Virus record (IMG/VR): IMGVR_UViG_3300010158_000027
Span: 217,270-281,269 of that record
DNA: 64,000 nt
Direction: 5' to 3' (one strand)
Positions 1,794 to 61,763 of this stretch are shown here, one piece after another. Below the pieces are notes generated by a model that was given only the letters and a program-made list of their open reading frames with translations, was not told the DNA's origin and did not search any database. The stretch's first letter is position 1. The number at the start of each line of letters is the position of its first letter. Both the position numbers and the translations under genes were made by a program.

Positions 1794-2222
1794 ATGAAGC
1801 AATTAATTAAAAAAATATTAAAAGAGGAATCGTTAAAGCATAATCTTAAACAACAGATTAAAGATTATGGTTGGGTAGATACTTCGCAAATGGTTAATGG
1901 ATCAAAAGAGTTGGCAAAATTGGCATTCAATAATGATCCAATGGGGTTTCTACATATGTTTGATGATTTGGATATGGTTCAGCGTAAGTTATCAGCAAAC
2001 TGGACTTTATTTAAACAAGAAAACGGAAATAATTTAATGTTGTTGGATAAAAAAATTATTTATATATCTTATGGTGATATTTGGTCATTTTTGACATATG
2101 GTTTTGGACTTAGAGATTCCCAAGTTAGGGACGTTATAAAGGTATGGTTGGGTGACGTGTACCATTTAAGGGGAATTACTATAGAGGCGGGATTTGATGA
2201 ATTATTCAGCCATATGCGTTAG
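1794..2222 (+). CDS. array-bearing paralog family member 1 (MKQLIKKILKEESLK...)
   Basis: Clear paralog of 17422, 59554 and 60769 (VNGSxELxKxxFxNDPMxFLHMF). Confidence 0.85.
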   Translation: MKQLIKKILKEESLKHNLKQQIKDYGWVDTSQMVNGSKELAKLAFNNDPMGFLHMFDDLDMVQRKLSANWTLFKQENGNNLMLLDKKIIYISYGDIWSFLTYGFGLRDSQVRDVIKVWLGDVYHLRGITIEAGFDELFSHMR

Positions 2223-2248
2223 TTGTGTAATTTAAAAGATTTATAATT
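2147..2248 (+). CRISPR. degenerate CRISPR-like repeat-spacer-repeat unit in gene 3' end
   Basis: GTTGGGTGACGTGTACCATTTAAGGGGAATTACTAT (2147-2182), 30-nt spacer, then a decayed repeat with AATTTAA in register. Confidence 0.4.
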
Positions 2249-14690: not shown

Positions 14691-16020
14691 TGTCACTCCA
14701 CCGAAAAACCCAACCATCTTTAGTGGTTGGGATGTAAGGTGTGAAATAATTTAATATTTTTTTAATAAAATTCTTCTTTTTGTTAAAACCAAGATATTTA
14801 TATAATATGAAGGTTATTAACAAATCATACAAAGTTAGAATTTACCCTAATAAAGAACAAAAAGTTCTTTTGGAAAAACATTTTGGTTGTATTAGATTCG
14901 TATATAATCATTTTTTAAATGTTAGAAATCTGGAATATAAAGAGAATAAAATCAATCTGAATTATGTTGTAACGGCAAATAAACTATCAGAAATGAAAAA
15001 TTTAGAAAATTTTAACTTTCTTAATGAGGTTAATTCACAATCATTACAATGGAGTTTAAAATATTTAGATAACTCATTTAGAAACTTCTTCAGAGGACAA
15101 ACAAAATTCCCTAATTTTAAGAAAAAATCAAATAACCAATCATTTAAAGTACCGGTTAATTCTACATTTAAAATAGAAAAAAATAAAATTATTATCCCTA
15201 AATTTAGAGAAGGTATCCATTTTAGAGGTAAATTAGAATTAAAAAATTTAATTAAATTTAATTCAATTAATATATCCAAAACCGCATCAGGTAAATATTA
15301 TGCTTCATTACAAGGGGAATTTAATTATACACCTAAAGTTCAAAATGATAATAAAGTAGGTATTGACTTAGGTTTAAAAAAGTTTTTAATAACCGATACT
15401 GGTGTTAAATTTGACAATCCTAAATTCCTTAAAAAACAATTAAAAAAATTAAAATACAAACAAAAACAATTAAGTAAAAAAAATAAAGGTTCTAATAATA
15501 GACAAAAACAAAGAATTTTAGTATCTTTAATTCATGAAAAAATAAGTAATAAAAGAAATGATTTTTTACATAAGTTAAGTCAAAAAATAGTTAATGAAAA
15601 TCAAATTATCTGTTTAGAAAACTTATCTGTTAAAAATATGATAAAAAACCATAAATTAGCTCAATCAATATCAGATGTTAGTTGGTCAAAATTTGTTGAT
15701 ATGTTAAAATATAAATCGGATTGGAATGATAGACAATTAGTTCAGATAGATAGGTTCTATCCTAGTTCTAAAAGTTGTTCCGCTTGTCATTATATAAACG
15801 AAGGATTAACATTAAAAGATGGAGAATGGACTTGTCCTTCTTGTAATACACATCACGATAGAGATGTAAATGCTGCTAAAAATATCCTTATACAAGGAAT
15901 AAACATATTGTCTGGTTCGGGAACCGAGTCGGACATTAAACAAAAACCTGTGGAGGCGTTGCGGTTACGCAAGTCTAAGAAACAGGAATCCCATTCATCT
16001 TTAGTGATTGGGTAGTTCAA
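14691..16020 (+). mobile_element. IS200/IS605-family element (tnpB only, IS1341-like)
   Basis: Related subterminal hairpins CCCAACCATCTTTAGTGGTTGGG (14709-14731) and CCCATTCATCTTTAGTGATTGGG (from 15990), right end TTCAA; no tnpA; left boundary approximate. Confidence 0.75.
14807..16015 (+). CDS. tnpB: RNA-guided endonuclease TnpB
   Basis: N-terminal KVRIYPNKEQ...FGCIRFVYN; RuvC GIDLG / LENL / DRDVNAA; CSAC-CPSC Zn ribbon. Confidence 0.93.
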   Translation: MKVINKSYKVRIYPNKEQKVLLEKHFGCIRFVYNHFLNVRNLEYKENKINLNYVVTANKLSEMKNLENFNFLNEVNSQSLQWSLKYLDNSFRNFFRGQTKFPNFKKKSNNQSFKVPVNSTFKIEKNKIIIPKFREGIHFRGKLELKNLIKFNSINISKTASGKYYASLQGEFNYTPKVQNDNKVGIDLGLKKFLITDTGVKFDNPKFLKKQLKKLKYKQKQLSKKNKGSNNRQKQRILVSLIHEKISNKRNDFLHKLSQKIVNENQIICLENLSVKNMIKNHKLAQSISDVSWSKFVDMLKYKSDWNDRQLVQIDRFYPSSKSCSACHYINEGLTLKDGEWTCPSCNTHHDRDVNAAKNILIQGINILSGSGTESDIKQKPVEALRLRKSKKQESHSSLVIG

Positions 16021-17421: not shown

Positions 17422-17856
17422 ATGAAACACATTATTAAAAAAATATTAAAAGAGGAATCGTTTAAACAAAGTCTTAAACAAATGGTTAAAGAGTTTGGTT
17501 GGGAGACTACTGCAGAAATGGTTAACGGATCGGAAGAGTTGTCAAAATCCGGATTCAACAATGATCCAATGGAATTCCTACATATGTTTAATGATTTGGA
17601 TGTCGCTCAAAGTGAGATTAAACCAGATTGGTATTTAGTTAAACAAGAAAACGGAAAAAATTTAATGGCTTACAATAAAAAAAGGGGACTTCTTTACGTA
17701 GTTTATGAAAGTGTTTTGTCATTTTTAACAAAAGGGTTTAAACTTGAATACGATGAAATACTGGCACTTATAAAGAAATGGGCGGATAAGTCATACAATT
17801 TAAAGGGGTTAGAAACACATGGGGTTTACCAATATGCTATTGAGCAGTTGGGTTAA
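17422..17856 (+). CDS. array-bearing paralog family member 2
   Basis: Paralog of 1794, 59554, 60769. Confidence 0.85.
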   Translation: MKHIIKKILKEESFKQSLKQMVKEFGWETTAEMVNGSEELSKSGFNNDPMEFLHMFNDLDVAQSEIKPDWYLVKQENGKNLMAYNKKRGLLYVVYESVLSFLTKGFKLEYDEILALIKKWADKSYNLKGLETHGVYQYAIEQLG

Positions 17857-17882
17857 TCTTACAAAATTATAATTAATAATAA
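17781..17882 (+). CRISPR. CRISPR-like repeat-spacer-repeat unit in gene 3' end
   Basis: GGCGGATAAGTCATACAATTTAAAGGGGTTAGAAAC (17781-17816), 30-nt spacer, decayed repeat GTTGGGTTAATCTTACAA from 17847. Confidence 0.5.
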
Positions 17883-20034: not shown

Positions 20035-20343
20035 CATCGGTTATTTGATCTAGCACTAGGATAATAACAGCCATTAGATGAAGCTAGCGTCGTGAATGGA
20101 GGTGTAAGCTAAGACAGACTTACAAAGTTGGGGTACCAATAGATACAAACCCCCAACACAAACAGATTGACACAAAGGCATGAACAGTGGTGTTGTCGTA
20201 AAGTGTTATAAGATTAATGATAGCTAAAAAATAAATCTTATAACTAGGCTCTCGGCAGTACGTTATACAATCTGAACAGGTGCTTCCTGTTTATTTTTTA
20301 CATAATACTTGACAATCTAAAAGTGATGGTTTAATATTATGTA

Positions 20344-20415
20344 AGTCAGTTAGCTCAGTTGGTAGAGCAATCCCCTTAAAAGGACGTGTCATTGGTTCGA
20401 ACCCTTTACTGGCTT
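20344..20415 (+). tRNA. degenerate tRNA (possible TAA anticodon), probably a pseudo-tRNA
   Basis: Acceptor AGTCAGT/ACTGGCT and D arm GCTCAGTTGGTAGAGC are good; anticodon and T stems mismatched. Confidence 0.45.
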
Positions 20416-20421
20416 ATTTTT

Positions 20422-43113: not shown

Positions 43114-43183
43114 TTGAAAAACATTTAGTATATTTGTAACATGAAACATTTATCAGTGAGTATAAATTTAAAACTTGGAAGTC

Positions 43184-44317
43184 ATGGAAAATCAAAATAG
43201 TGTTGCGTATGTAGGAAAAATAGGTTCGGTGGTTGAAATACCAGGAGCTGACAACATAGAATTGGTGACTGTCGGTGGGTGGAATGCCATAACCAAAAAG
43301 GGTGAATACCAGATTGGCGATAAAATGGTTGTTGCTACTACAGATGCGGTAATACCACAAGCGTTATCTGACTTGATGGAAGTTACTAACTACCTTCGTA
43401 AAGGTCAAAGAGTTCGTACAGTAAAACTTCGTGGAGTTTACTCTGAGTGTTTGTTAATACCATTCAAATTTTTGTCACCAAAATCTTTGGAAAGTAATGT
43501 TAATGATGGTGACGACATGATGGGGATATTGGGTATTGTTAAATACGAACCACCAGTAAAAACCGTTCAGTTGAGTGTTGGGGGACGTAAAGTAAAATAC
43601 CACCAAAATCCCAACTTCAAGGTGTATCACAAATTCCCTAATCAAAAAAACGTACCTGATATGTTCAATGAGGAAGATGAGGTTGTAATCACTCGTAAAC
43701 TACACGGAACAAATTCCAGATATGGAATTGTGAGAAAGAAAAGACTTTCTTTATTGGATCGTGTTAAAATCTTTTTTGGTAATAAATGGGCGGGATTCGA
43801 GTTTGTAATGGGTAGTCATAACGTTGAGAAAGGTTCCGACTCACAAGGATTCTACGATACTGACGTATGGAAAACAATTGCTGAAAACTACAGAATACGA
43901 GGTAATTTATGGAAACACGTAAAGGACACATACGAACCATACGACTTATCTGAAGGTGTTATTATATATGGTGAAATCTACGGGGCTGGTATACAAAAAA
44001 ACTATGACTATGGTTTAACCGATATAGAATTTGCGGGGTTCGATGTTGAAGTTGATGGTACTTACCAATCACACATAAATGAAATGGTACACTTCAATTG
44101 CTTAGATTTACCACAGGTTGAAGTGTTGTATCGTGGTAATTGGGATAAGGGAATACAAGATAATTTTGTGTTTGATAATTTCATAGAGGGAACTAAAGTA
44201 CCACACGAAGGTATAGTTGTAAAATCTGTAACAGGTGTTCGTTCTAAGGTTTCCAAAGTGATAAACCCTGGATATTTAATAGCGAGTGAAAAACATAATT
44301 ACGGTGATTCACATTGA
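43184..44317 (+). CDS. RNA ligase, DRB0094/Rnl5 family
   Basis: N-terminal OB-like IPGADNIE...VKLRGVYSE; motif I KLHGTN, GEIYG.GIQ, FD, EGIVVK, KVIN..Y. Confidence 0.88.
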   Translation: MENQNSVAYVGKIGSVVEIPGADNIELVTVGGWNAITKKGEYQIGDKMVVATTDAVIPQALSDLMEVTNYLRKGQRVRTVKLRGVYSECLLIPFKFLSPKSLESNVNDGDDMMGILGIVKYEPPVKTVQLSVGGRKVKYHQNPNFKVYHKFPNQKNVPDMFNEEDEVVITRKLHGTNSRYGIVRKKRLSLLDRVKIFFGNKWAGFEFVMGSHNVEKGSDSQGFYDTDVWKTIAENYRIRGNLWKHVKDTYEPYDLSEGVIIYGEIYGAGIQKNYDYGLTDIEFAGFDVEVDGTYQSHINEMVHFNCLDLPQVEVLYRGNWDKGIQDNFVFDNFIEGTKVPHEGIVVKSVTGVRSKVSKVINPGYLIASEKHNYGDSH

Positions 44318-44358
44318 TAGATTCACTTTTATTAATTAACTTTACAAAAAAATGAAAT

Positions 44359-44625
44359 ATGGGATGGATTAGCGTTGATGTTGACTTGAGCGATGTTTGG
44401 AGTGGAATGGATAGAAGTGACAAAAGAAATATGGCGGAATGGTTATATGATGATGGAAGTTTAGGTTCACACCCAAATCCTGAAATACGAAGACTGGTGA
44501 GGGGTGATGAGGAATCGAACGGTGAAAAAGAGTTAAGAGATAATCTATCGAAGTTATGGAATGGACATTATCAATTAACAAACGAAGAGGAGAATTTAAT
44601 AAAACAAATAGCAAATAGATTATGA
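44359..44625 (+). CDS. hypothetical protein
   Basis: 88-aa ORF. Confidence 0.7.
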   Translation: MGWISVDVDLSDVWSGMDRSDKRNMAEWLYDDGSLGSHPNPEIRRLVRGDEESNGEKELRDNLSKLWNGHYQLTNEEENLIKQIANRL

Positions 44626-44858
44626 TGTCAAGAGAAATTATTTATGGTGTGTGTGATAAAACTGGAAATTGTGATTCATATTTTGGGTTCTTTAAACATG
44701 AAGATGACGCAAAAAAAGAAGTCAAAATCCAAGCAGATAGAATGAAAGAGGACTTAGGTATTATGGATATTGTCGTAAAAGACGGTAGGGCTGTCACTAT
44801 GGAAACTGATAAACTTGAAAAAATATTAATTATAATACACGGTTATGTTATTAGATGA
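44622..44858 (+). CDS. hypothetical protein
   Basis: Overlapping operon ORF. Confidence 0.65.
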   Translation: MMSREIIYGVCDKTGNCDSYFGFFKHEDDAKKEVKIQADRMKEDLGIMDIVVKDGRAVTMETDKLEKILIIIHGYVIR

Positions 44859-45075
44859 CGAAAAAAAACCTTTAGGGTTAAAGGTGAGCGATTTTATCAC
44901 CACAAATATAATTTGGTACTTATTATTCTCTTTAATATATTGGGATTTTAACGTAACTAATTGGTGGTTAGTTCAGAGTGCATGGGGTAGATTTATTCTG
45001 ATTATTATGGAATATGGTATAATGAGAACCTCCTTTAATGAAAAAAGAAACGGAAAAAAAGATGGAAAAATTTAA
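44845..45075 (+). CDS. small membrane protein
   Basis: Two hydrophobic segments. Confidence 0.55.
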   Translation: MLLDDEKKPLGLKVSDFITTNIIWYLLFSLIYWDFNVTNWWLVQSAWGRFILIIMEYGIMRTSFNEKRNGKKDGKI

Positions 45076-45268
45076 AATTTATGCAAGATTTGCCAATGAC
45101 ATGGCGTATTACAGTAGAATAAACATTAATGTCGAAAGTTTAAAAGATCCACATATACTTGCAGAAGAAGTTTTCTGTACTGTTGATGGTGTTAGAATTG
45201 CGATAAAAAGAAAAGATTGGGACGATTTAAACAATCACATCCTGGAGGAGTATGAACTAAATAATTAA
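45062..45268 (+). CDS. hypothetical protein
   Basis: ATG at 45062. Confidence 0.55.
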   Translation: MEKFKIYARFANDMAYYSRININVESLKDPHILAEEVFCTVDGVRIAIKRKDWDDLNNHILEEYELNN

Positions 45269-45277
45269 AAAATAGTC

Positions 45278-46216
45278 ATGAAACATTTAAATACCAACAA
45301 TAGAATTTCAGATGAAGATTATAATGAGATGCTTAATGAGGTGACACCAGATTTAGATATACCATCTTGTTGGAGTAATTTAAAAAACGATGAATACGCC
45401 CCAGCATATGTTACAGTACCTAAAGTCCCTGCTGGGGTTTACGAGATTGGTTGGAACTCCAATTTACAATCCCACACATTAAAAAAACAACCATTTAAAA
45501 CCGATGAGTTGTATCATCTACCATCCTACGAGATAACCGACATTTTACTGGATATCGATAATTTTTGGGATCGGGCGGATAACTATAAGAAATACAATTA
45601 TATTCACAAAAGGGGTATTTTAATGTATGGGGAACCTGGATGTGGTAAATCGGGAATCATCCAATTAATTTCACAACAGTTAATTGAAAAGGATGGTATT
45701 GTATTAAATGTTAAAGATGAGGAAGATGTGGACAGATTTACATCATTTATTGCGACATTTAGAAAGGTGGAACCTAACCGACCGTTAGTTGTTTTATTGG
45801 AGGACATCGATTCTTTGGCTGGGGAAAACAGATTTCAAACTGCCAGACTATTAAACATCCTTGATGGTGTAAAACAAATCGATGGTGTGGTATATATCGC
45901 AACGACTAACTACCCTGAAAAATTGCAAGAACGTATCACAAACAGACCCTCACGATTCGATAGACGTTACCAAGTGGAATTACCTAACGAAGAGATTAGA
46001 AGAGCATACATCAACCACAAACTAAATGAGGATGATTTAAAAAATGTTAATATTGAAGAGTGGATTAAAAAAACTGAAGGTATGTCATTGTCACATCTAA
46101 AAGAAGTTGTAATTTCGGTTATAGTTATGGGTCGAAGTTTTGAAGAGACGATGAGTAATCTCGAAGGATTAAAAAGGGCACCAACGATTAAGGGAAATGG
46201 TAAAGTAGGTTTTTAA
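45278..46216 (+). CDS. AAA+ ATPase
   Basis: GEPGCGKS, LLEDID, ATTN, RPSRFD. Confidence 0.9.
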   Translation: MKHLNTNNRISDEDYNEMLNEVTPDLDIPSCWSNLKNDEYAPAYVTVPKVPAGVYEIGWNSNLQSHTLKKQPFKTDELYHLPSYEITDILLDIDNFWDRADNYKKYNYIHKRGILMYGEPGCGKSGIIQLISQQLIEKDGIVLNVKDEEDVDRFTSFIATFRKVEPNRPLVVLLEDIDSLAGENRFQTARLLNILDGVKQIDGVVYIATTNYPEKLQERITNRPSRFDRRYQVELPNEEIRRAYINHKLNEDDLKNVNIEEWIKKTEGMSLSHLKEVVISVIVMGRSFEETMSNLEGLKRAPTIKGNGKVGF

Positions 46217-46381
46217 ATAAAAAAAACGGTATGAGCAGAAATTTTGAAATATTCTTATTGGTAATTTACGGAATTAACATGGTGATGAATATAATGTCAA
46301 AAGATTGGATGGTTGCCAATGGTTGGATTTGCGCGGCATTAGCGCAAGTAAGAGTACTATCTTTAATACGTAAAGATTAAT

Positions 46382-46798
46382 ATGAAACATCACGCAAACT
46401 TTTTTGTTAATAGGTTGGTAACTGAATGGTTAAAGAACGGTAAGATTATAATTGGTTGTGATCTTGATGATACCATCATACCTTACAATGAAGAAATTAA
46501 AGACAACTGTAAAAAAATGGTTAATTTGATTTTGGAATGTCAAGAAGAAGGTATTATATTTTTAATTAACACGGCAAGAAGTGAATACCAATTAGAGAAG
46601 GCTAAACAACAAGTTGAAGAAATGGGTATTATTGTTCACGGAGTTAATAAAATGCATGATGAGTGGGATAAACCATACGGTGTGAATGGTAAATTATATG
46701 CTAACATTTTTTTAGATGATAGGGGGGGATTTTGGGACACGTATCGGACATTAACTACCGCACTAACAATAGTTAAACAGGAAAGGAAAAAACTATGA
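46382..46798 (+). CDS. HAD-superfamily protein
   Basis: DLDDT, TAR, K.YA..FLDDR. Confidence 0.75.
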   Translation: MKHHANFFVNRLVTEWLKNGKIIIGCDLDDTIIPYNEEIKDNCKKMVNLILECQEEGIIFLINTARSEYQLEKAKQQVEEMGIIVHGVNKMHDEWDKPYGVNGKLYANIFLDDRGGFWDTYRTLTTALTIVKQERKKL

Positions 46799-47373
46799 AA
46801 TTGATTTTTTTGGATCACGACGGAGTTATTGCTCTTTCCAACAATTGGGGAGGACGAACAAAGAAATTTGCGAAGTATCGTTCATCGAATCCCGATTCTA
46901 GTAAAAATATTAACGATGCTCCAGTGACTTTTCGTTTTGATGATTTTGATAAAAAGGCAATTAAAATCCTTAACAAGATACTCGAAGAAACGGGGGCGGA
47001 AATTGTTGTATCATCAGATTGGAAACTATATGCGACATTAGAAGAGCTTGGTGAATATTATGAAGAGCAAGGAATTATTAAAAAACCAATTGCGTTAACT
47101 GATAACTTAAAAGATTGTACCGTACATGGTGATGATTTTATATGGTCGACAATGTGGGATTCGGAACAAATGCGAACAATTGAAATAAAACAATATCTTC
47201 ACGATCATCCTGAAGTAACACATTGGGTGGCTATTGATGATTTAAATATGGGTAAAATTGGTGAGCCATGGAAAGATTTATGGGCGATAGATAATTTTGT
47301 GTTAACTCCGAAGTCTAACGAGGGGATAAAACAATTGGGTATTAAAGAAAAGATTTTAAACTACTTAGGGTGA
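46795..47373 (+). CDS. HAD domain protein (Swiss-army-knife RNA repair type)
   Basis: IFLDHDGV, VVSSDW, WVAIDD. Confidence 0.8.
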   Translation: MKLIFLDHDGVIALSNNWGGRTKKFAKYRSSNPDSSKNINDAPVTFRFDDFDKKAIKILNKILEETGAEIVVSSDWKLYATLEELGEYYEEQGIIKKPIALTDNLKDCTVHGDDFIWSTMWDSEQMRTIEIKQYLHDHPEVTHWVAIDDLNMGKIGEPWKDLWAIDNFVLTPKSNEGIKQLGIKEKILNYLG

Positions 47374-59494: not shown

Positions 59495-59553
59495 TCATTT
59501 GAAATGTGGAGGTAACACTCCACATTTTTGTTTTATAGGGTATTTATAGTATT

Positions 59554-60066
59554 ATGAAAGAACTGATTAGGAACATATTAAAAGAGGAATCATTAAAGCA
59601 AAGTCTTAGACAGCAAGTTAAAGATTATGGTTGGAAAGATACCGCAGAAATGGTTAATGGATCAGAAGAGTTGGCAAAATTGGCGTTCAATAATGATCCA
59701 ATGGAATTTTTACACATGTTTGATGATATGGATTTTGTTCAGTCAAAAATTGAAAAAGACTGGACATTATTTAGATTTGAAAAAGGGCATAATCTGATGA
59801 TTTACGATAGAAAAGATGAGTATGTTTACATAGATTATTCTGACATTTGGTCATTTTTGGAAGATGGTTTCGAACTTAACTACTCTGAGACGCAGGAACT
59901 TACAACAAGATGGTTGGAAGAAGTATACAAATTAAGGGGAGTCACAACACATAGATGGGGCAAGACTAATGAATTCTTGGTGGATGAAGCATACAAATTA
60001 AGGGGAGTCACAACTCCAAACAGGTTATTCTTATCTATAAACCGGTGGATGAAGCATACAATTTAA
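59554..60066 (+). CDS. array-bearing paralog family member 3
   Basis: Paralog; C-terminus read through repeats (YKLRGVTT twice). Confidence 0.85.
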   Translation: MKELIRNILKEESLKQSLRQQVKDYGWKDTAEMVNGSEELAKLAFNNDPMEFLHMFDDMDFVQSKIEKDWTLFRFEKGHNLMIYDRKDEYVYIDYSDIWSFLEDGFELNYSETQELTTRWLEEVYKLRGVTTHRWGKTNEFLVDEAYKLRGVTTPNRLFLSINRWMKHTI

Positions 60067-60067
60067 G
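59913..60067 (+). CRISPR. CRISPR-like mini-array: 2 full + 1 partial 36-nt repeats; 30- and 29-nt spacers
   Basis: GTTGGAAGAAGTATACAAATTAAGGGGAGTCACAAC (59913), GGTGGATGAAGCATACAAATTAAGGGGAGTCACAAC (59979), partial at 60044. Confidence 0.72.
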
Positions 60068-60073
60068 AAAGAA

Positions 60074-60718
60074 ATGAAACAGTTAATTAAACAAATATTA
60101 TTACAAGAGGTAAATAAGAAATACTCTAAACCAACACCAAGTGTGGAAAAACTAATCTATAATTGGTTGGATAACTATATTTCAGGAGCGCAGATGTATC
60201 ACGAAAAACACTATGAGTTTAATTATGGTTTTGAATGGTGTAATGATGGTATGGAAATAATGAGTTTTGATTTAGCGTTTGAATATATTGATGAATACCA
60301 TAGTAATAGAGTAAAAAATAGTGAAAGGAATTTTGATAGGGGAACTTTACAGATGCCTAAAGACATAATCCAAGAAATGCTTACGGACATTCCTGTAAGA
60401 AAAAACTATTTAATATATGTTATTGAGGAGTGGTTCGAGGACACACTATTAGATAAGGTTTCAACTATGATTGGAAGAGACGATATTTCAATTGATGAGT
60501 TTGAGGAATATCCAGAAACGGCACTAGTTTGCGTTCCACCACAAACAAAACCTGAAGGGTTAACTGATGATCAAATGATCGACTATATTGTTTCAAATAC
60601 TTTGCATAGAAAGGAACATTTAGAAAGGAGTATGTTGGAAGATCCTGATTTTGATTTAGAAAAATTGTATTTAGATATACTGAAGATGGGTGAGAGTAAA
60701 AGATTAAGAGGACAATAA
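60074..60718 (+). CDS. leader-bearing protein (MKQLIKQILLQE)
   Basis: Start lies within the decayed last repeat. Confidence 0.8.
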   Translation: MKQLIKQILLQEVNKKYSKPTPSVEKLIYNWLDNYISGAQMYHEKHYEFNYGFEWCNDGMEIMSFDLAFEYIDEYHSNRVKNSERNFDRGTLQMPKDIIQEMLTDIPVRKNYLIYVIEEWFEDTLLDKVSTMIGRDDISIDEFEEYPETALVCVPPQTKPEGLTDDQMIDYIVSNTLHRKEHLERSMLEDPDFDLEKLYLDILKMGESKRLRGQ

Positions 60719-60768
60719 CAGATTGGAAACGTCCACATTTTAATTTTATGGGATATTTATAATGATAT

Positions 60769-61293
60769 ATGAAACAGTTAATTAAACAAATACTAAAAGA
60801 GGAATCGTTAAAGCATAATCTTAAACAACAGATTAAGGATTATGGATGGAGAGATACCGCAGAAATGGTTAATGGATCAAAAGAGTTGGCAAAATTAGCA
60901 TTCGATAATGATCCGATGGAATTCCTACATATGTTTGATGATATGGATGTTGTTCAGAGCGAATCTGACATAAATTGGACTTTATTTAGATATGAAAAAA
61001 GAAATAATCTAATGGTTCACAATAAAAAAAATAAATATGTTTACATAGATTATTCTGACATTTGGTTATTTTTGAAAGAAGGTTTTGGACTTAAACACTC
61101 TGACATACAGGCATTTACAACGAGATGGGTGGATGAATCATACAATTTAAAGGGAGTCACAACTGACTCGTCGTTTAAAATCTTTATTATCGAGGTGGAT
61201 GAATCATACAATTTAAAGGGAGTCACAACCAAACGAGGGATAAGCAGGGACGCAATCATGGTGGATGAAGCATACAATTTAAGAAAGAAATGA
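60769..61293 (+). CDS. array-bearing paralog family member 4
   Basis: Paralog; VDESYNLKGVTT twice plus VDEAYNL. Confidence 0.85.
   Translation: MKQLIKQILKEESLKHNLKQQIKDYGWRDTAEMVNGSKELAKLAFDNDPMEFLHMFDDMDVVQSESDINWTLFRYEKRNNLMVHNKKNKYVYIDYSDIWLFLKEGFGLKHSDIQAFTTRWVDESYNLKGVTTDSSFKIFIIEVDESYNLKGVTTKRGISRDAIMVDEAYNLRKK
61128..61283 (+). CRISPR. CRISPR-like mini-array: 2 identical + 1 partial 36-nt repeats; two 30-nt spacers
   Basis: GGTGGATGAATCATACAATTTAAAGGGAGTCACAAC at 61128 and 61194; partial at 61260. Confidence 0.75.
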
Positions 61294-61763
61294 AACAGTT
61301 AATTAAACAAATATTAAAAGAGGAAACTGAAGATGATCGCGTTAGAGTATCCAAAGGTATCAATGCGTTGGTTAGTTTAGTGAAGAACACTTTTCCATTT
61401 ATTGTTGGTTGGGTTTGGGCCAAAGAGGATTGGGATGAGGGTATGTTTGGGATATATATACACTTAGTTATTGATCAAAAAAAAGTTAAAGAGATTTATG
61501 GTTTAAATTATAGATCATGGTATGATGGTAAACATAGTGTACTACAAAAGGCAATCAACGATAAATCGACATATGCGTACCCCATTAGTTTATTGGATTA
61601 CGAATCGGAAGGTATTGATGCTTATGAGGAAAATAGGGCAATTAAAGATTTAGTTAACGATACGTATGAGATTATACCTGATGAGTATAAAGTGGAAGTA
61701 AATAAACCATACTTTTATCAAGAAGCCAAAACTCTTGAAATTGACAGTTATATTTTTGTTTAA
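61290..61763 (+). CDS. leader-bearing protein (MKQLIKQILKEE)
   Basis: 157-aa ORF. Confidence 0.8.
   Translation: MKQLIKQILKEETEDDRVRVSKGINALVSLVKNTFPFIVGWVWAKEDWDEGMFGIYIHLVIDQKKVKEIYGLNYRSWYDGKHSVLQKAINDKSTYAYPISLLDYESEGIDAYEENRAIKDLVNDTYEIIPDEYKVEVNKPYFYQEAKTLEIDSYIFV

What the first reader, a model, noticed from the sequence alone, without database searches (positions are those of the whole stretch)
59554..61293. Candidate new system: a phage gene family whose 3' ends are CRISPR-like mini-arrays (36-nt repeat, 30-nt spacer)
Seen: four paralogs (1794, 17422, 59554, 60769) all run into a 36-nt element G(T/G/C)NGG...A(A/T)TTAA(A/G)GG...(CACAAC in the two best-preserved loci) that also encodes the domain's last helix (W-x-x-x-x-Y-x-L-(R/K)-G). 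It is followed by unrelated 30-nt (once 29-nt) spacers and further repeat copies that decay toward the 3' end. All six spacers differ. No cas gene is recognisable in the window. Known: 36/30 geometry with GTTG...CAAC ends is typical of Bacteroidota type VI-B (Cas13b) arrays; from memory the Bergeyella Cas13b repeat is GTTGGAACTGCTCTCATTTTGGAGGGTAATCACAAC (verify). Inference, not mutually exclusive: (a) the mRNA is processed into guide-like RNAs that decoy or redirect host Cas13b, or that load into the encoded ~140-aa protein; (b) the repeat is a dual-coding landing pad for host Cas1-Cas2, each event adding 66 nt (22 codons) and diversifying the C-terminus; (c) it is a decoy sink for spacer acquisition.
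Basis: partly seen in the sequence, partly recalled or inferred. Interest (0 to 1): 0.92.

Follow-up and report, generated by a model that had tools for sequence, protein, structure and literature searches.

The report
Phage gene ending in CRISPR mini-array
A family of small genes in AT-rich freshwater jumbo phages ends in a 36-base stretch that codes for the protein's last helix and also acts as the first repeat of a small CRISPR-type array, and these arrays gain or lose 66-base repeat-plus-spacer units in nature although no cas gene lies nearby.

Summary
At 59913-60067 and 61128-61283, three copies of a 36-nt repeat are separated by unique spacers of 30, 29, 30 and 30 nt. The first copy encodes the last 12 codons of a conserved ~130-aa phage protein. 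The last copy is cut after 24 nt and abuts the next gene's ATG.

- **Spread:** the same layout, with 2-7 repeats and 29-32-nt spacers, recurs in dozens of related phage contigs. The protein family has about 1,800 clusters at 90% identity.
- **Turnover:** orthologous loci with near-identical flanks differ by exact repeat-plus-spacer units (66 nt in the clean case). In three of four comparisons the extra unit lies on the gene side. This is the signature of CRISPR adaptation.
- **Nucleotide-level selection:** the first repeat is fixed on rare codons (TTG, TAC, AGG, GGA, GTC) that spell GTTG...AAGGGGAGTCACAAC.
- **Repeat class:** it belongs to the Bacteroidota 36/30 class. It is about equally close to Cas13b (VI-B) repeats, Flavobacterium II-C repeats, and a cas1/cas2-less type I-Fv-like system I found on other jumbo phages.
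- **Against a Cas13b assignment:** it lacks the VI-B hairpin, so a specific Cas13b link is not supported.
- **Open:** I found no protospacer, no matching host array and no cas gene on this contig.

Best reading: a dual-coding repeat that host Cas1-Cas2 uses in trans. The benefit to the phage is unresolved.

The parts
59501..59528 (+). Terminator-like hairpin followed by a T run, just upstream of family gene copy 1. It marks the start of a new transcription unit.
   Evidence: A weaker related sequence precedes copy 2 (family D5).
59554..60066 (+). Family gene copy 1. The 170-aa ORF has a core domain of about 132 aa and then reads on through the array.
   Evidence: protein family of 1,824 clusters, no Pfam or PHROG match.
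59913..59948 (+). Repeat 1 of locus 1 (GTTGGAAGAAGTATACAAATTAAGGGGAGTCACAAC). It is dual-coding and encodes LEEVYKLRGVTT.
59949..59978 (+). Spacer 1 of locus 1 (30 nt). It is absent from the orthologous locus in L113.
   Evidence: Its only exact 24-mer match in IMG/VR is the array itself.
59979..60014 (+). Repeat 2 of locus 1.
60015..60043 (+). Spacer 2 of locus 1 (29 nt). It is identical in L113 and is also seen in P0010, P0013, P0018 and P0020.
60044..60067 (+). Truncated terminal repeat of locus 1. It keeps the first 24 nt and then runs into the start region of gene 60074.
   Evidence: (57-nt identical junction, family D3).
60074..60718 (+). Downstream gene (214 aa, unknown function, N-terminus MKQLIKQIL). 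No terminator separates it from the array.
60769..61293 (+). Family gene copy 2 (174-aa ORF). It reads in frame through the whole array, and its TGA stop overlaps the ATG of gene 61290.
61128..61163 (+). Repeat 1 of locus 2 (GGTGGATGAATCATACAATTTAAAGGGAGTCACAAC), dual-coding.
61164..61193 (+). Spacer 1 of locus 2 (30 nt).
   Evidence: no protospacer in IMG/VR.
61194..61229 (+). Repeat 2 of locus 2, identical to repeat 1.
61230..61259 (+). Spacer 2 of locus 2 (30 nt, 50% GC).
61260..61283 (+). Truncated terminal repeat of locus 2, fused to the start of gene 61290.
61290..61763 (+). Downstream gene (157 aa, unknown function). Its start codon overlaps the family ORF's stop (ATGA).
1794..2238 (+). 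Paralog with a decayed array: degenerate R1 at 2147-2182, then 39 nt, then a remnant of the terminal repeat at 2222-2238.
   Evidence: orthologous loci L114, L115 and L120 carry intact arrays of 1, 2 and 3 spacers.
17422..17872 (+). Paralog with an R1-like end at 17781-17816 and a weak second copy at 17847-17872 (offset 66 nt).
   Evidence: 14/24 identity, p about 0.03.

Best explanation
These are genuine CRISPR-type arrays carried by a jumbo phage, seeded on a dual-coding repeat.

**What the repeat is.** The last 36 nt of the family gene's core domain has been shaped, largely by codon choice, into a repeat of the Bacteroidota 36-nt GTTG...(A/G)TCACAAC class.

**How the array grows and shrinks.** A Cas1-Cas2 integrase uses this repeat as an integration site. 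The integrase is most likely the host's type II-C module, which is known to serve cas1-less arrays in trans. Each event adds a ~30-nt foreign spacer on the gene side and duplicates the 36-nt repeat, giving a 66-nt unit. Recombination between repeats removes units again or swaps them between paralogous loci. One spacer is always kept, because recombination with the truncated terminal repeat would destroy the gene's own end.

**Expression.** The array lies inside a polycistronic unit between the family gene and the next gene, and it is at least partly translated.

**Shown versus inferred.**
- Shown: the anatomy, the nucleotide-level constraint on the repeat, and the gain or loss of repeat-plus-spacer units in nature, on the gene side in three of four comparisons.
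- Inferred: that the integrase is the host's, and that the transcripts supply repeat-bearing RNAs to a CRISPR effector (host Cas9 or Cas13b, or a co-infecting phage's I-Fv-like Cascade).
- Undecided: whether those RNAs act as guides against unknown targets or as non-targeting competitors.
For: **Geometry and spread.**
- 36-nt repeats with 29-32-nt unique spacers occur in 33 non-redundant arrays holding 63 unique spacers. Arrays reach 7 repeats (L121).
- Terminal repeats are degenerate or truncated at the gene-distal end. The B. zoohelcum VI-B arrays end the same way.

**Turnover.**
- Window locus 1 has one extra gene-proximal repeat+spacer compared with L113. The distal spacer is 29/29 identical.
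- L115 has one extra proximal unit compared with L114, with about 100% identical flanks and R1 identical to R2 (36/36), as expected for a fresh duplication.
- The orthologous locus holds 0, 1, 2 or 3 units in four genomes.
- In three of four shared-spacer comparisons the extra unit lies on the gene side; in the fourth (P0016 vs P0035) it is distal.

**Foreign origin of spacers.** In the first 30 spacers, GC was 38% against 30% for the phage background (Mann-Whitney p = 2e-5); it is about 36.5% over 60 spacers.

**Nucleotide-level selection.**
- R1 has the highest synonymous conservation of 47 equal-sized blocks along the gene.
- Six of nine informative codons are fixed on rare codons, against about 10% elsewhere. 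These codons create GTTG, TACAA, AAGGGGA and TCACAAC.
- The helix W..(D/E)VY.L is found across the whole family as protein, while the repeat-like nucleotide form is confined to a subfamily.

**Repeat class.**
- The repeat resembles VI-B, II-C and phage I-Fv-like repeats at 18-23/36 positions, with alignment z-scores of 4-8 against shuffles.
- In F. columnare the II-C Cas1-Cas2 serves the cas1-less VI-B array in trans, and both arrays have 36-bp repeats (PMC8092290).
- Other jumbo phages, with the same low GC and in one case (L118) the same N-terminal gene motif, carry cas1/cas2-less arrays of the same 36/30 geometry. So phage DNA of this kind does get spacers.
Against: - No cas gene was found in the window ORFs scanned, and no Cas7fv-like gene lies on the window's contig.
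- No bacterial array with this repeat turned up in 185,579 species genomes or in JGI metagenomes, with the patterns I used.
- No protospacer was found for three window spacers and one from a relative (L115) in IMG/VR, including the phage's own 281-kb contig. None was found for 63 family spacers in about 0.9 Mb of held sequence, nor in GenBank phages or PLSDB plasmids.
- As RNA, the repeat lacks both the VI-B inner stem and the Cas6 hairpin of the I-Fv-like repeats.
- The array is translated, and in-frame stops are depleted. This is unusual for a crRNA precursor.
- Spacer lengths are less tightly set than in the cas-linked phage arrays: 50% are 30 nt against 86%.
- Which event was a gain and which a loss cannot be decided from pairs of sequences.
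Confidence: 0.55

Rival explanations
1. The repeat is a mimic that acts as a decoy, and the spacers are by-products. Selection acts only on the repeat-like R1. It could work as DNA, as an integration sink: a phage genome in many copies with 2-4 sites per genome would outcompete the host's own leader-repeat junction and lower host immunisation. Or it could work as RNA, as a Racr-like or non-targeting competitor for Cas proteins. The spacers would then be scars that are tolerated as long as they do not disturb the operon.
For: - R1 is under nucleotide-level selection.
- There are four paralogous sites in 64 kb.
- Nearly half of the arrays hold a single spacer, and no spacer has a detectable target.
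- In-frame stops are depleted, as expected for passengers in a translationally coupled operon.
- Non-targeting crRNAs and solitary repeat units are known to inhibit CRISPR-Cas by competition (PMC10651486).
Against: - As RNA the repeat lacks the hairpins that Cas13b or Cas6 would bind.
- An integration sink should mostly collect spacers from the phage itself, yet 3 of 3 window spacers tested are absent from its own 281-kb contig.
- No host array with a similar repeat was found to compete with.
Confidence: 0.25
2. The arrays are read on the antisense strand as type II-C-like crRNA units. On the minus strand each spacer is followed by a full repeat that begins GTTGTGACTCCCCTTAAATTGTA. The truncated terminal repeat keeps exactly the part that lies upstream of the last spacer. 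A host tracrRNA and Cas9 would use these RNAs.
For: - The 23 nt conserved at nucleotide level are the leader-distal part, which is the part retained in mature type II crRNAs (knowledge of type II biogenesis).
- The repeat has no structure of its own, like type II repeats.
- The F. psychrophilum II-C repeat shares GTTGG...ATACAATTT...TCACAAC with it.
- In F. columnare the II-C array is transcribed toward the leader, and a TTG lies 33 bp upstream of each spacer (PMC8092290). The antisense phage repeat also starts GTTG.
- Under this reading even single-spacer loci give one complete unit.
Against: - No tracrRNA-like anti-repeat was found in the window beyond the paralogous R1 copies.
- No host II-C array with this repeat was found.
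- No Bacteroidota-type promoter motif is evident by eye in the antisense repeat, and the sigma-70 scan finds fewer promoter-like sites than shuffles.
- There are no transcription data.
Confidence: 0.15
3. The arrays are neutral by-products. The gene end happens to resemble a host repeat and is occasionally hit by off-target Cas1-Cas2 integration ('neo-CRISPR' formation, recalled from the literature and not checked here). Neither the repeat-likeness nor the spacers benefit the phage.
For: - There are no targets, no cas genes and no RNA structure.
- Arrays are short and spacer lengths are sloppy.
- The helix is ancestral as a protein feature, and YNL(K/R)G codons already resemble the AATTTAAGGG core.
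Against: - Rare-codon fixation is concentrated on R1, and every fixed codon moves toward the canonical repeat termini and core.
- 32 of 33 non-redundant arrays keep at least one spacer.
- The unit boundaries coincide with GTTG and CAAC.
- The repeat's 3' 23 nt are conserved across proteins that are only 45-55% identical.
Confidence: 0.12
4. The repeats are ordinary protein tandem repeats of 22 aa that diverged after duplication.
For: The period of 66 nt equals 22 codons, the ORF of locus 2 reads through all three copies, and in-frame stops are somewhat depleted.
Against: - Repeats are identical at the DNA level while the spacers are completely unrelated.
- Half of the spacers are 29 or 31 nt long and break the frame.
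- Tails are not conserved between orthologs.
- The AF2 model gives the tail pLDDT below 50.
- Whole units are gained or lost together with new, unrelated spacers.
Confidence: 0.02

Closest known systems
Virus-borne CRISPR mini-arrays (as summarised in PMC11656645)
   Same: Short arrays of one to a few spacers carried by a virus without cas genes. They are presumed to depend on Cas proteins supplied in trans.
   Different: - Known mini-arrays have repeats identical to the host's arrays, and most of their spacers match related viruses. Here I found no host array with this repeat and no protospacer.
- The first repeat lies inside, and forms, the 3' coding end of a conserved protein gene.
- The arrays sit inside translated operons.
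- Several paralogous copies occur per genome.
Solitary repeat units / RNA anti-CRISPRs (Racr; PMC10651486)
   Same: Phage-encoded mimics of CRISPR repeats without cas genes. Competition for Cas proteins is a plausible mode of action. Paralogs 1794 and 17422 are close to solitary units.
   Different: Racrs are small non-coding RNAs in intergenic regions, placed behind their own promoter, and they mimic the repeat's structure. This element is coding, lacks the hairpin, and carries spacers that turn over.
Type VI-B (Cas13b) arrays of Flavobacteriia, e.g. B. zoohelcum, Chryseobacterium, F. columnare
   Same: - 36-nt repeats with 30-nt spacers.
- GTTG(G)... and ...TCACAAC termini.
- An AAGGG core.
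- A truncated terminal repeat.
- Dependence on a cas1/cas2 module located elsewhere.
   Different: The phage repeat has no inner stem. No cas13b was seen. Identity is only 20-23/36, and 17 of those positions were imposed by the search pattern.
Phage-borne type I-Fv-like CRISPR-Cas of other jumbo phages
   Same: - 36/30 geometry and the same polarity.
- Repeat 3' end GGGAATCACAAC, against GGGGA(G/A)TCACAAC here.
- No cas1/cas2 within 10 kb.
- Same low GC. L118 shares the MKIIITENQ N-terminal motif.
   Different: Those arrays have their own Cas3, Cas7fv-like and Cas6 genes, a Cas6-type hairpin (AUUCC/GGAAU), 5-25 repeats, and lie in non-coding DNA. None of the 32 IMG/VR loci with the Cas7fv-like gene lies on a contig that carries the family arrays.
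In-trans adaptation between II-C and VI-B in Flavobacterium columnare (PMC8092290)
   Same: A cas1-less array with 36-bp repeats is extended by the II-C Cas1-Cas2. Shared motifs sit at the leader-distal repeat end (GTTGT on one strand, ACAAC on the other).
   Different: There the client array is chromosomal and has a non-coding leader. Here the 'leader' would be a phage protein-coding gene.

Membership tests
CRISPR array (generic) | Near-identical direct repeats of 23-50 nt separated by unique spacers of uniform length | tested here: met
   36-nt repeats, 29-32-nt spacers, 63 unique spacers.
CRISPR array (generic) | Polarised gain of repeat-spacer units between closely related genomes | tested here: met
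   The extra unit is on the gene-proximal side in 3 of 4 comparisons (distal in P0016 vs P0035). Gain cannot be told from loss in any single pair.
CRISPR array (generic) | Degenerate leader-distal terminal repeat | tested here: met
CRISPR array (generic) | Non-coding AT-rich leader and adjacent cas genes | tested here: not met
   The upstream flank is a protein-coding gene. No cas gene was found in the window ORFs scanned.
CRISPR array (generic) | Transcription and processing into crRNAs | not testable with these tools
   Only assembled contigs were available. The RNA run held diverged relatives only.
Type VI-B (Cas13b) array | 36-nt repeat GTTG...CAAC with 30-nt spacers | tested here: met
   The window's own copies start GGTG, except R1 of locus 1.
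Type VI-B (Cas13b) array | Repeat RNA folds into an outer GUUG/CAAC stem plus a 6-7-bp inner stem | tested here: not met
   natural repeats -4.6 to -11.2 kcal/mol, phage repeats -0.3 to -7.2, and none forms a 6-7-bp inner stem (at most 3 bp).
Type VI-B (Cas13b) array | cas13b in the same genome or in the host | tested here: inconclusive
   None in the window (no ORF above 769 aa). The host is unknown.
Type II-C array (antisense reading) | Repeat similar to host II-C repeats, with a tracrRNA anti-repeat | tested here: inconclusive
   The repeat shares GTTGG, ATACAATTT and TCACAAC with the F. psychrophilum repeat. No anti-repeat was found in the window. Host tracrRNA is unknown.
Viral mini-array (inter-virus conflict type) | Repeats identical to arrays of the host | tested here: not met
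   The genome scan and metagenome scan found the repeat only next to the phage gene family. L094, binned to a Flavobacterium MAG, is a phage fragment.
Viral mini-array (inter-virus conflict type) | Spacers match related viruses | tested here: not met
   The test is limited to exact 24- and 30-mers for 4 spacers in IMG/VR, plus BLAST of all spacers against held loci.
Racr / solitary repeat unit | Non-coding small RNA that mimics the repeat's sequence and structure | tested here: not met
   The element lies inside an ORF and lacks the repeat hairpin. Expression as a small RNA was not testable.
Phage type I-Fv-like system | Cas7fv-like, Cas6 and Cas3 genes in the same genome, and a Cas6 hairpin in the repeat | tested here: not met
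   Searches (no hit on the window's contig or on any other family-array contig; hairpin present in the cas-linked repeats) (absent from the family repeats).

The most novel reading that the evidence does not exclude
A phage protein-coding sequence has been recoded by synonymous codon choice into a working CRISPR repeat so that it captures the host's Cas1-Cas2 integrase. The captured integration would serve the phage in one of two ways. It could be an adaptation sink that diverts spacer integration away from the host's own arrays. Or it could be a cassette mechanism that rewrites the protein's C-terminal tail and the coupling to the downstream gene in 22-codon steps. Either would be a new way for a virus to exploit the adaptation stage of CRISPR immunity rather than the interference stage.
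Probability: 0.2. Interest if true: 0.95.

Novelty: new variant of a known kind. Interest (0 to 1): 0.8.

Why it matters
**What is new.** Phage-borne mini-arrays and repeat mimics are known. An array whose seed repeat is also the conserved coding end of a protein gene has, to my knowledge, not been described.

**Scale.** The family has about 1,800 protein clusters at 90% identity, several copies occur per genome, and unit gain and loss is visible in natural populations.

**What it shows.**
- A CRISPR integrase acts on phage DNA in nature.
- A coding sequence can be held, through rare codons, in a repeat-competent state.

**What it makes testable.**
- What a Bacteroidota II-C Cas1-Cas2 needs in a repeat and a 'leader'.
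- Whether phages exploit the adaptation stage of CRISPR immunity.

**Practical point.** Array finders that mask coding regions will miss such loci, and gene callers will report spurious variable C-termini.

Tried and rejected
**Database and family searches that found nothing.**
- Rfam on the region: no CRISPR-DR or other family.
- Pfam, PHROGs, the protein atlas and fold searches for the family protein: no known family or fold.
- Megablast and blastn against GenBank phages and PLSDB: no relatives and no protospacers.
- Paper searches for two Cas13b repeat strings: 0 hits. The Bergeyella repeat was instead confirmed from the genome scan.

**Protospacer searches that found only the arrays themselves.**
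- One recently gained spacer from L115 and three window spacers gave only self-array hits, or none, in IMG/VR.
- Neither the 63 family spacers nor the 172 cas-linked spacers have any target in held sequence.

**Tests that were uninformative.**
- Read laying on Logan contigs: the assemblies break at the repeats, so no population variants could be read. The only RNA run held diverged relatives.
- Complex prediction of protein plus repeat RNA was not folded, so it is no evidence either way.

**Ideas tested and dropped.**
- Hairpins between the repeat's end and the spacer's start, flagged by the terminator scan, are at chance level.
- The idea that the window's phage carries the I-Fv-like cas genes: no Cas7fv-like hit on its contig.
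- Ordinary protein repeats: rejected (see rival explanations).
Full report
**Where the window comes from.** The window is the last 64 kb of IMG/VR contig IMGVR_UViG_3300010158_000027, which is 281,269 bp long. Window position 60769 corresponds to contig position 278038. GC content is 31.6%. The ORFs are phage-like: lysozymes, HNH/NUMOD3 homing endonucleases, thymidylate synthase, a DNA methylase, an RNA ligase and a TnpB. Sequencing runs that hold the region are freshwater and sediment metagenomes. No close relative exists among GenBank phages.

**The observation.** At 59913-60067 and 61128-61283 there are three copies each of a 36-nt repeat with a 66-nt period.
- The spacers are unique and measure 30, 29, 30 and 30 nt.
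- The first copy encodes the last 12 codons of the core of a ~130-aa protein (ORFs 59554-60066 and 60769-61293).
- The third copy keeps only its first 24 nt and runs straight into the start of the next gene.
- Terminal repeat plus next-gene start are 57/57 identical between the two loci.
- The paralogs at 1794 and 17422 carry decayed versions.
- The protein is real. It has 1,824 clusters at 90% identity and 838 at 50%, none with a Pfam family or a name. The AF2 model is confident over about residues 10-130 and disordered in the tail. There is no significant fold match.

**The layout is a property of the family.** A 23-nt core of the repeat occurs in seven other IMG/VR contigs, always at the 3' end of a family gene. 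A profile search brought in 35 viral loci, and a three-repeat pattern brought in 14 metagenome loci.
- In all there are 33 non-redundant arrays with 1-7 repeats and 63 unique spacers. Spacer lengths are 29 nt (15), 30 nt (29) and 31 nt (15), plus a few odd ones.
- The consensus repeat is GTTGGATGAGGTATACAATTTAAGGGGAGTCACAAC.
- Positions 5-13 are locus-specific and are copied faithfully within an array. Positions 14-36 are nearly invariant across proteins that are only 45-55% identical.
- The last repeat is usually cut after ...TACAATTTAA and joined to an A-rich stretch and the ATG of the next gene.

**Not protein repeats.** The three spacer lengths put downstream copies in all three frames, so tails end as ...VDEAYNLRKK*...RWMKHTI* or ...VG*. 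Tails are unrelated between orthologs and are modelled as disordered.

**Turnover.**
- Window locus 1 and L113 have the same upstream DUF932 gene and about 87-93% identity. They differ by an exact 66-nt block of one repeat plus spacer 1, while the distal spacer is identical.
- L115 and L114 come from two samples of one study, and their flanks are virtually identical. They differ by one repeat plus a new 30-nt spacer on the gene side, and the two repeats flanking the new spacer are 36/36 identical.
- That locus is the ortholog of the window's 1794 paralog. Four genomes carry 0 (decayed), 1, 2 and 3 units there.
- Of four shared-spacer comparisons, three (window vs L113, L115 vs L114, L120 vs P0003) have the extra unit on the gene side, and one (P0016 vs P0035) has an extra distal spacer, which a deletion would also explain.
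- One spacer occurs in arrays at two different paralogous loci, and one array is a chimera of two repeat types. So arrays also recombine.
- Spacers are richer in GC than the phage DNA: 38% against 30% in the first 30 (p = 2e-5) and about 36.5% over 60.

**Nucleotide-level constraint.** In a codon alignment of 33 non-redundant genes, the R1 block has the highest excess synonymous homozygosity of 47 contiguous blocks.
- Six of nine informative codons are fixed on codons that are rare in these phages: TTG 18%, GAG 22%, GTC 6%, TAC 24%, AGG 11%, GGA 29%. Elsewhere the share is about 10%.
- Three of six informative codons just upstream behave the same way.
- These choices are the ones that spell GTTG, TACAA, AAGGGGA and, with GTC/ATC ACA AC, TCACAAC.
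- The helix W..(D/E)VY.L is family-wide as protein, while the repeat-like form (YNLRGVT) marks a subfamily of 27 out of 116 representatives.
- I read this as a coding sequence held in a repeat-competent state.

- None of these has the phage repeat. The only near-identical hit, L094, is a phage fragment binned into a Flavobacterium MAG.
- Published Flavobacterium repeats (PMC5395568) show that the F. psychrophilum II-C repeat shares GTTGG, ATACAATTT and TCACAAC with the phage repeat.
- The metagenome scan also found two arrays outside the family.
  - L118 is flanked by a Cas7fv-like gene, Cas6 and Cas3.
  - Its relatives lie on contigs that reach 270-600 kb, with arrays of 36-nt repeats and 30-nt spacers ending ...TTCCGTAAGGGAATCACAAC. 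No cas1 or cas2 lies within 10 kb.
- By sequence the family repeat is about equally close to all three groups (18-23/36).
- By structure it matches neither VI-B nor the Cas6-type repeats. Being unstructured is what type II repeats are like.
- What the three groups share is the 36/30 geometry, GTTG and (A/G/T)TCACAAC. This is most simply a signature of the integrase, given that F. columnare II-C Cas1-Cas2 extends the VI-B array in trans (PMC8092290).
- None of the 32 IMG/VR loci with the Cas7fv-like gene is on a contig with family arrays.

**Targets.** None was found.
- Exact searches of four spacers in IMG/VR returned only the arrays themselves or nothing, even though the window phage's own 281-kb contig is in that collection.
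- BLAST of all family and cas-linked spacers against about 0.9 Mb of held loci, GenBank phages and plasmids gave nothing.

**Translation.** When all spacers are 30 nt long, the family ORF ends in a TGA that overlaps the next gene's ATG. In the other two frames it stops inside the next repeat, at GGATGA or ATTTAA.
- In-frame stops in spacers are fewer than expected: 23% against 40% in the other frames and 49% in shuffles (p = 0.004 for first spacers).
- Only 21% of 117 protein tails end inside the first spacer.
- The effect is modest. It fits selection to keep ribosomes moving toward the coupled downstream gene. It does not by itself show that the tails have a function.

**Conclusion.** The Cas13b-specific part is not. 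I commit to CRISPR-type arrays seeded on a dual-coding repeat and extended by a Cas1-Cas2 integrase acting in trans. The use to the phage is still open between a source of guides or competitor RNAs, a decoy at the DNA or RNA level, and a tolerated by-product of repeat mimicry.

Noticed in passing
window 1794, 17422, 59554, 60074, 60769, 61290, 61763 (ORF starts); L118:9504: Seven ORFs start with MK(Q/E/N/H)(L/I)I(K/R)xILKEE although three of them (60074, 61290, 61763) are otherwise unrelated to the family. Related phages use MKIIITENQ in the same position. This could be a shared N-terminal helix or targeting signal, or a conserved translation-start or recombination sequence.
   Followed up: partly
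L118/L165/L166, L130-L132, L133-L164: Contigs of up to ~600 kb, most in the jumbo-phage size range, carry a compact type I-Fv-like CRISPR-Cas: Cas3, a Cas7fv-like protein (PF28157), an unannotated ORF in the Cas5 position, and Cas6. Their arrays have 36-nt repeats and 30-nt spacers, and no cas1 or cas2 lies within 10 kb. I collected 172 unique spacers and found no targets among held sequences.
   Followed up: partly
window 14780-16015: An IS605-family TnpB (OrfB_IS605, Cas12f1-like TNB and HTH domains) lies inside the phage genome, about 1.4 kb upstream of paralog 17422.
   Followed up: no
L010:3450-3490; L114 and L115 distal spacer: Some 'spacers' are tandem arrays of an 11-nt unit: (TACCCCACAAG)n in L010 and (CTTCGGGAAAG)n in L114 and L115. 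The copy number differs between two otherwise identical genomes.
   Followed up: no
window 60044-60100 and 61260-61316: A 57-nt stretch (terminal repeat plus the first 9 codons of the next gene) is 100% identical at the two loci, although the downstream genes then diverge completely. This suggests recent gene conversion or a junction under selection.
   Followed up: no
L119 (second array), L120, L129: The same spacer sits in arrays at two different paralogous loci. One array switches repeat type halfway along. Both point to recombination between arrays.
   Followed up: partly
window 43175-47373: An RNA ligase with a PHA02142 OB-fold, an AAA ATPase and a HAD_SAK_2 'Swiss Army Knife RNA repair' domain protein lie close together. 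This may be an RNA-repair module, which would be relevant if hosts use RNA-cleaving defences.
   Followed up: no
window 20343-20416: ARAGORN calls a tRNA-like gene with an undetermined two-base anticodon.
   Followed up: no
L070 (Bergeyella zoohelcum arrays): Both VI-B arrays end in a repeat truncated after about 20 nt (GTTGGAACTGCTCTCATTTT followed by ATTCGTG...). The phage arrays end in the same style.
   Followed up: no
spacers of all family arrays: Stop codons in the gene's reading frame are depleted inside spacers: 23% against 40-49% expected. The three possible frames all terminate within about 30 nt of the next gene's ATG in two-repeat arrays.
   Followed up: partly
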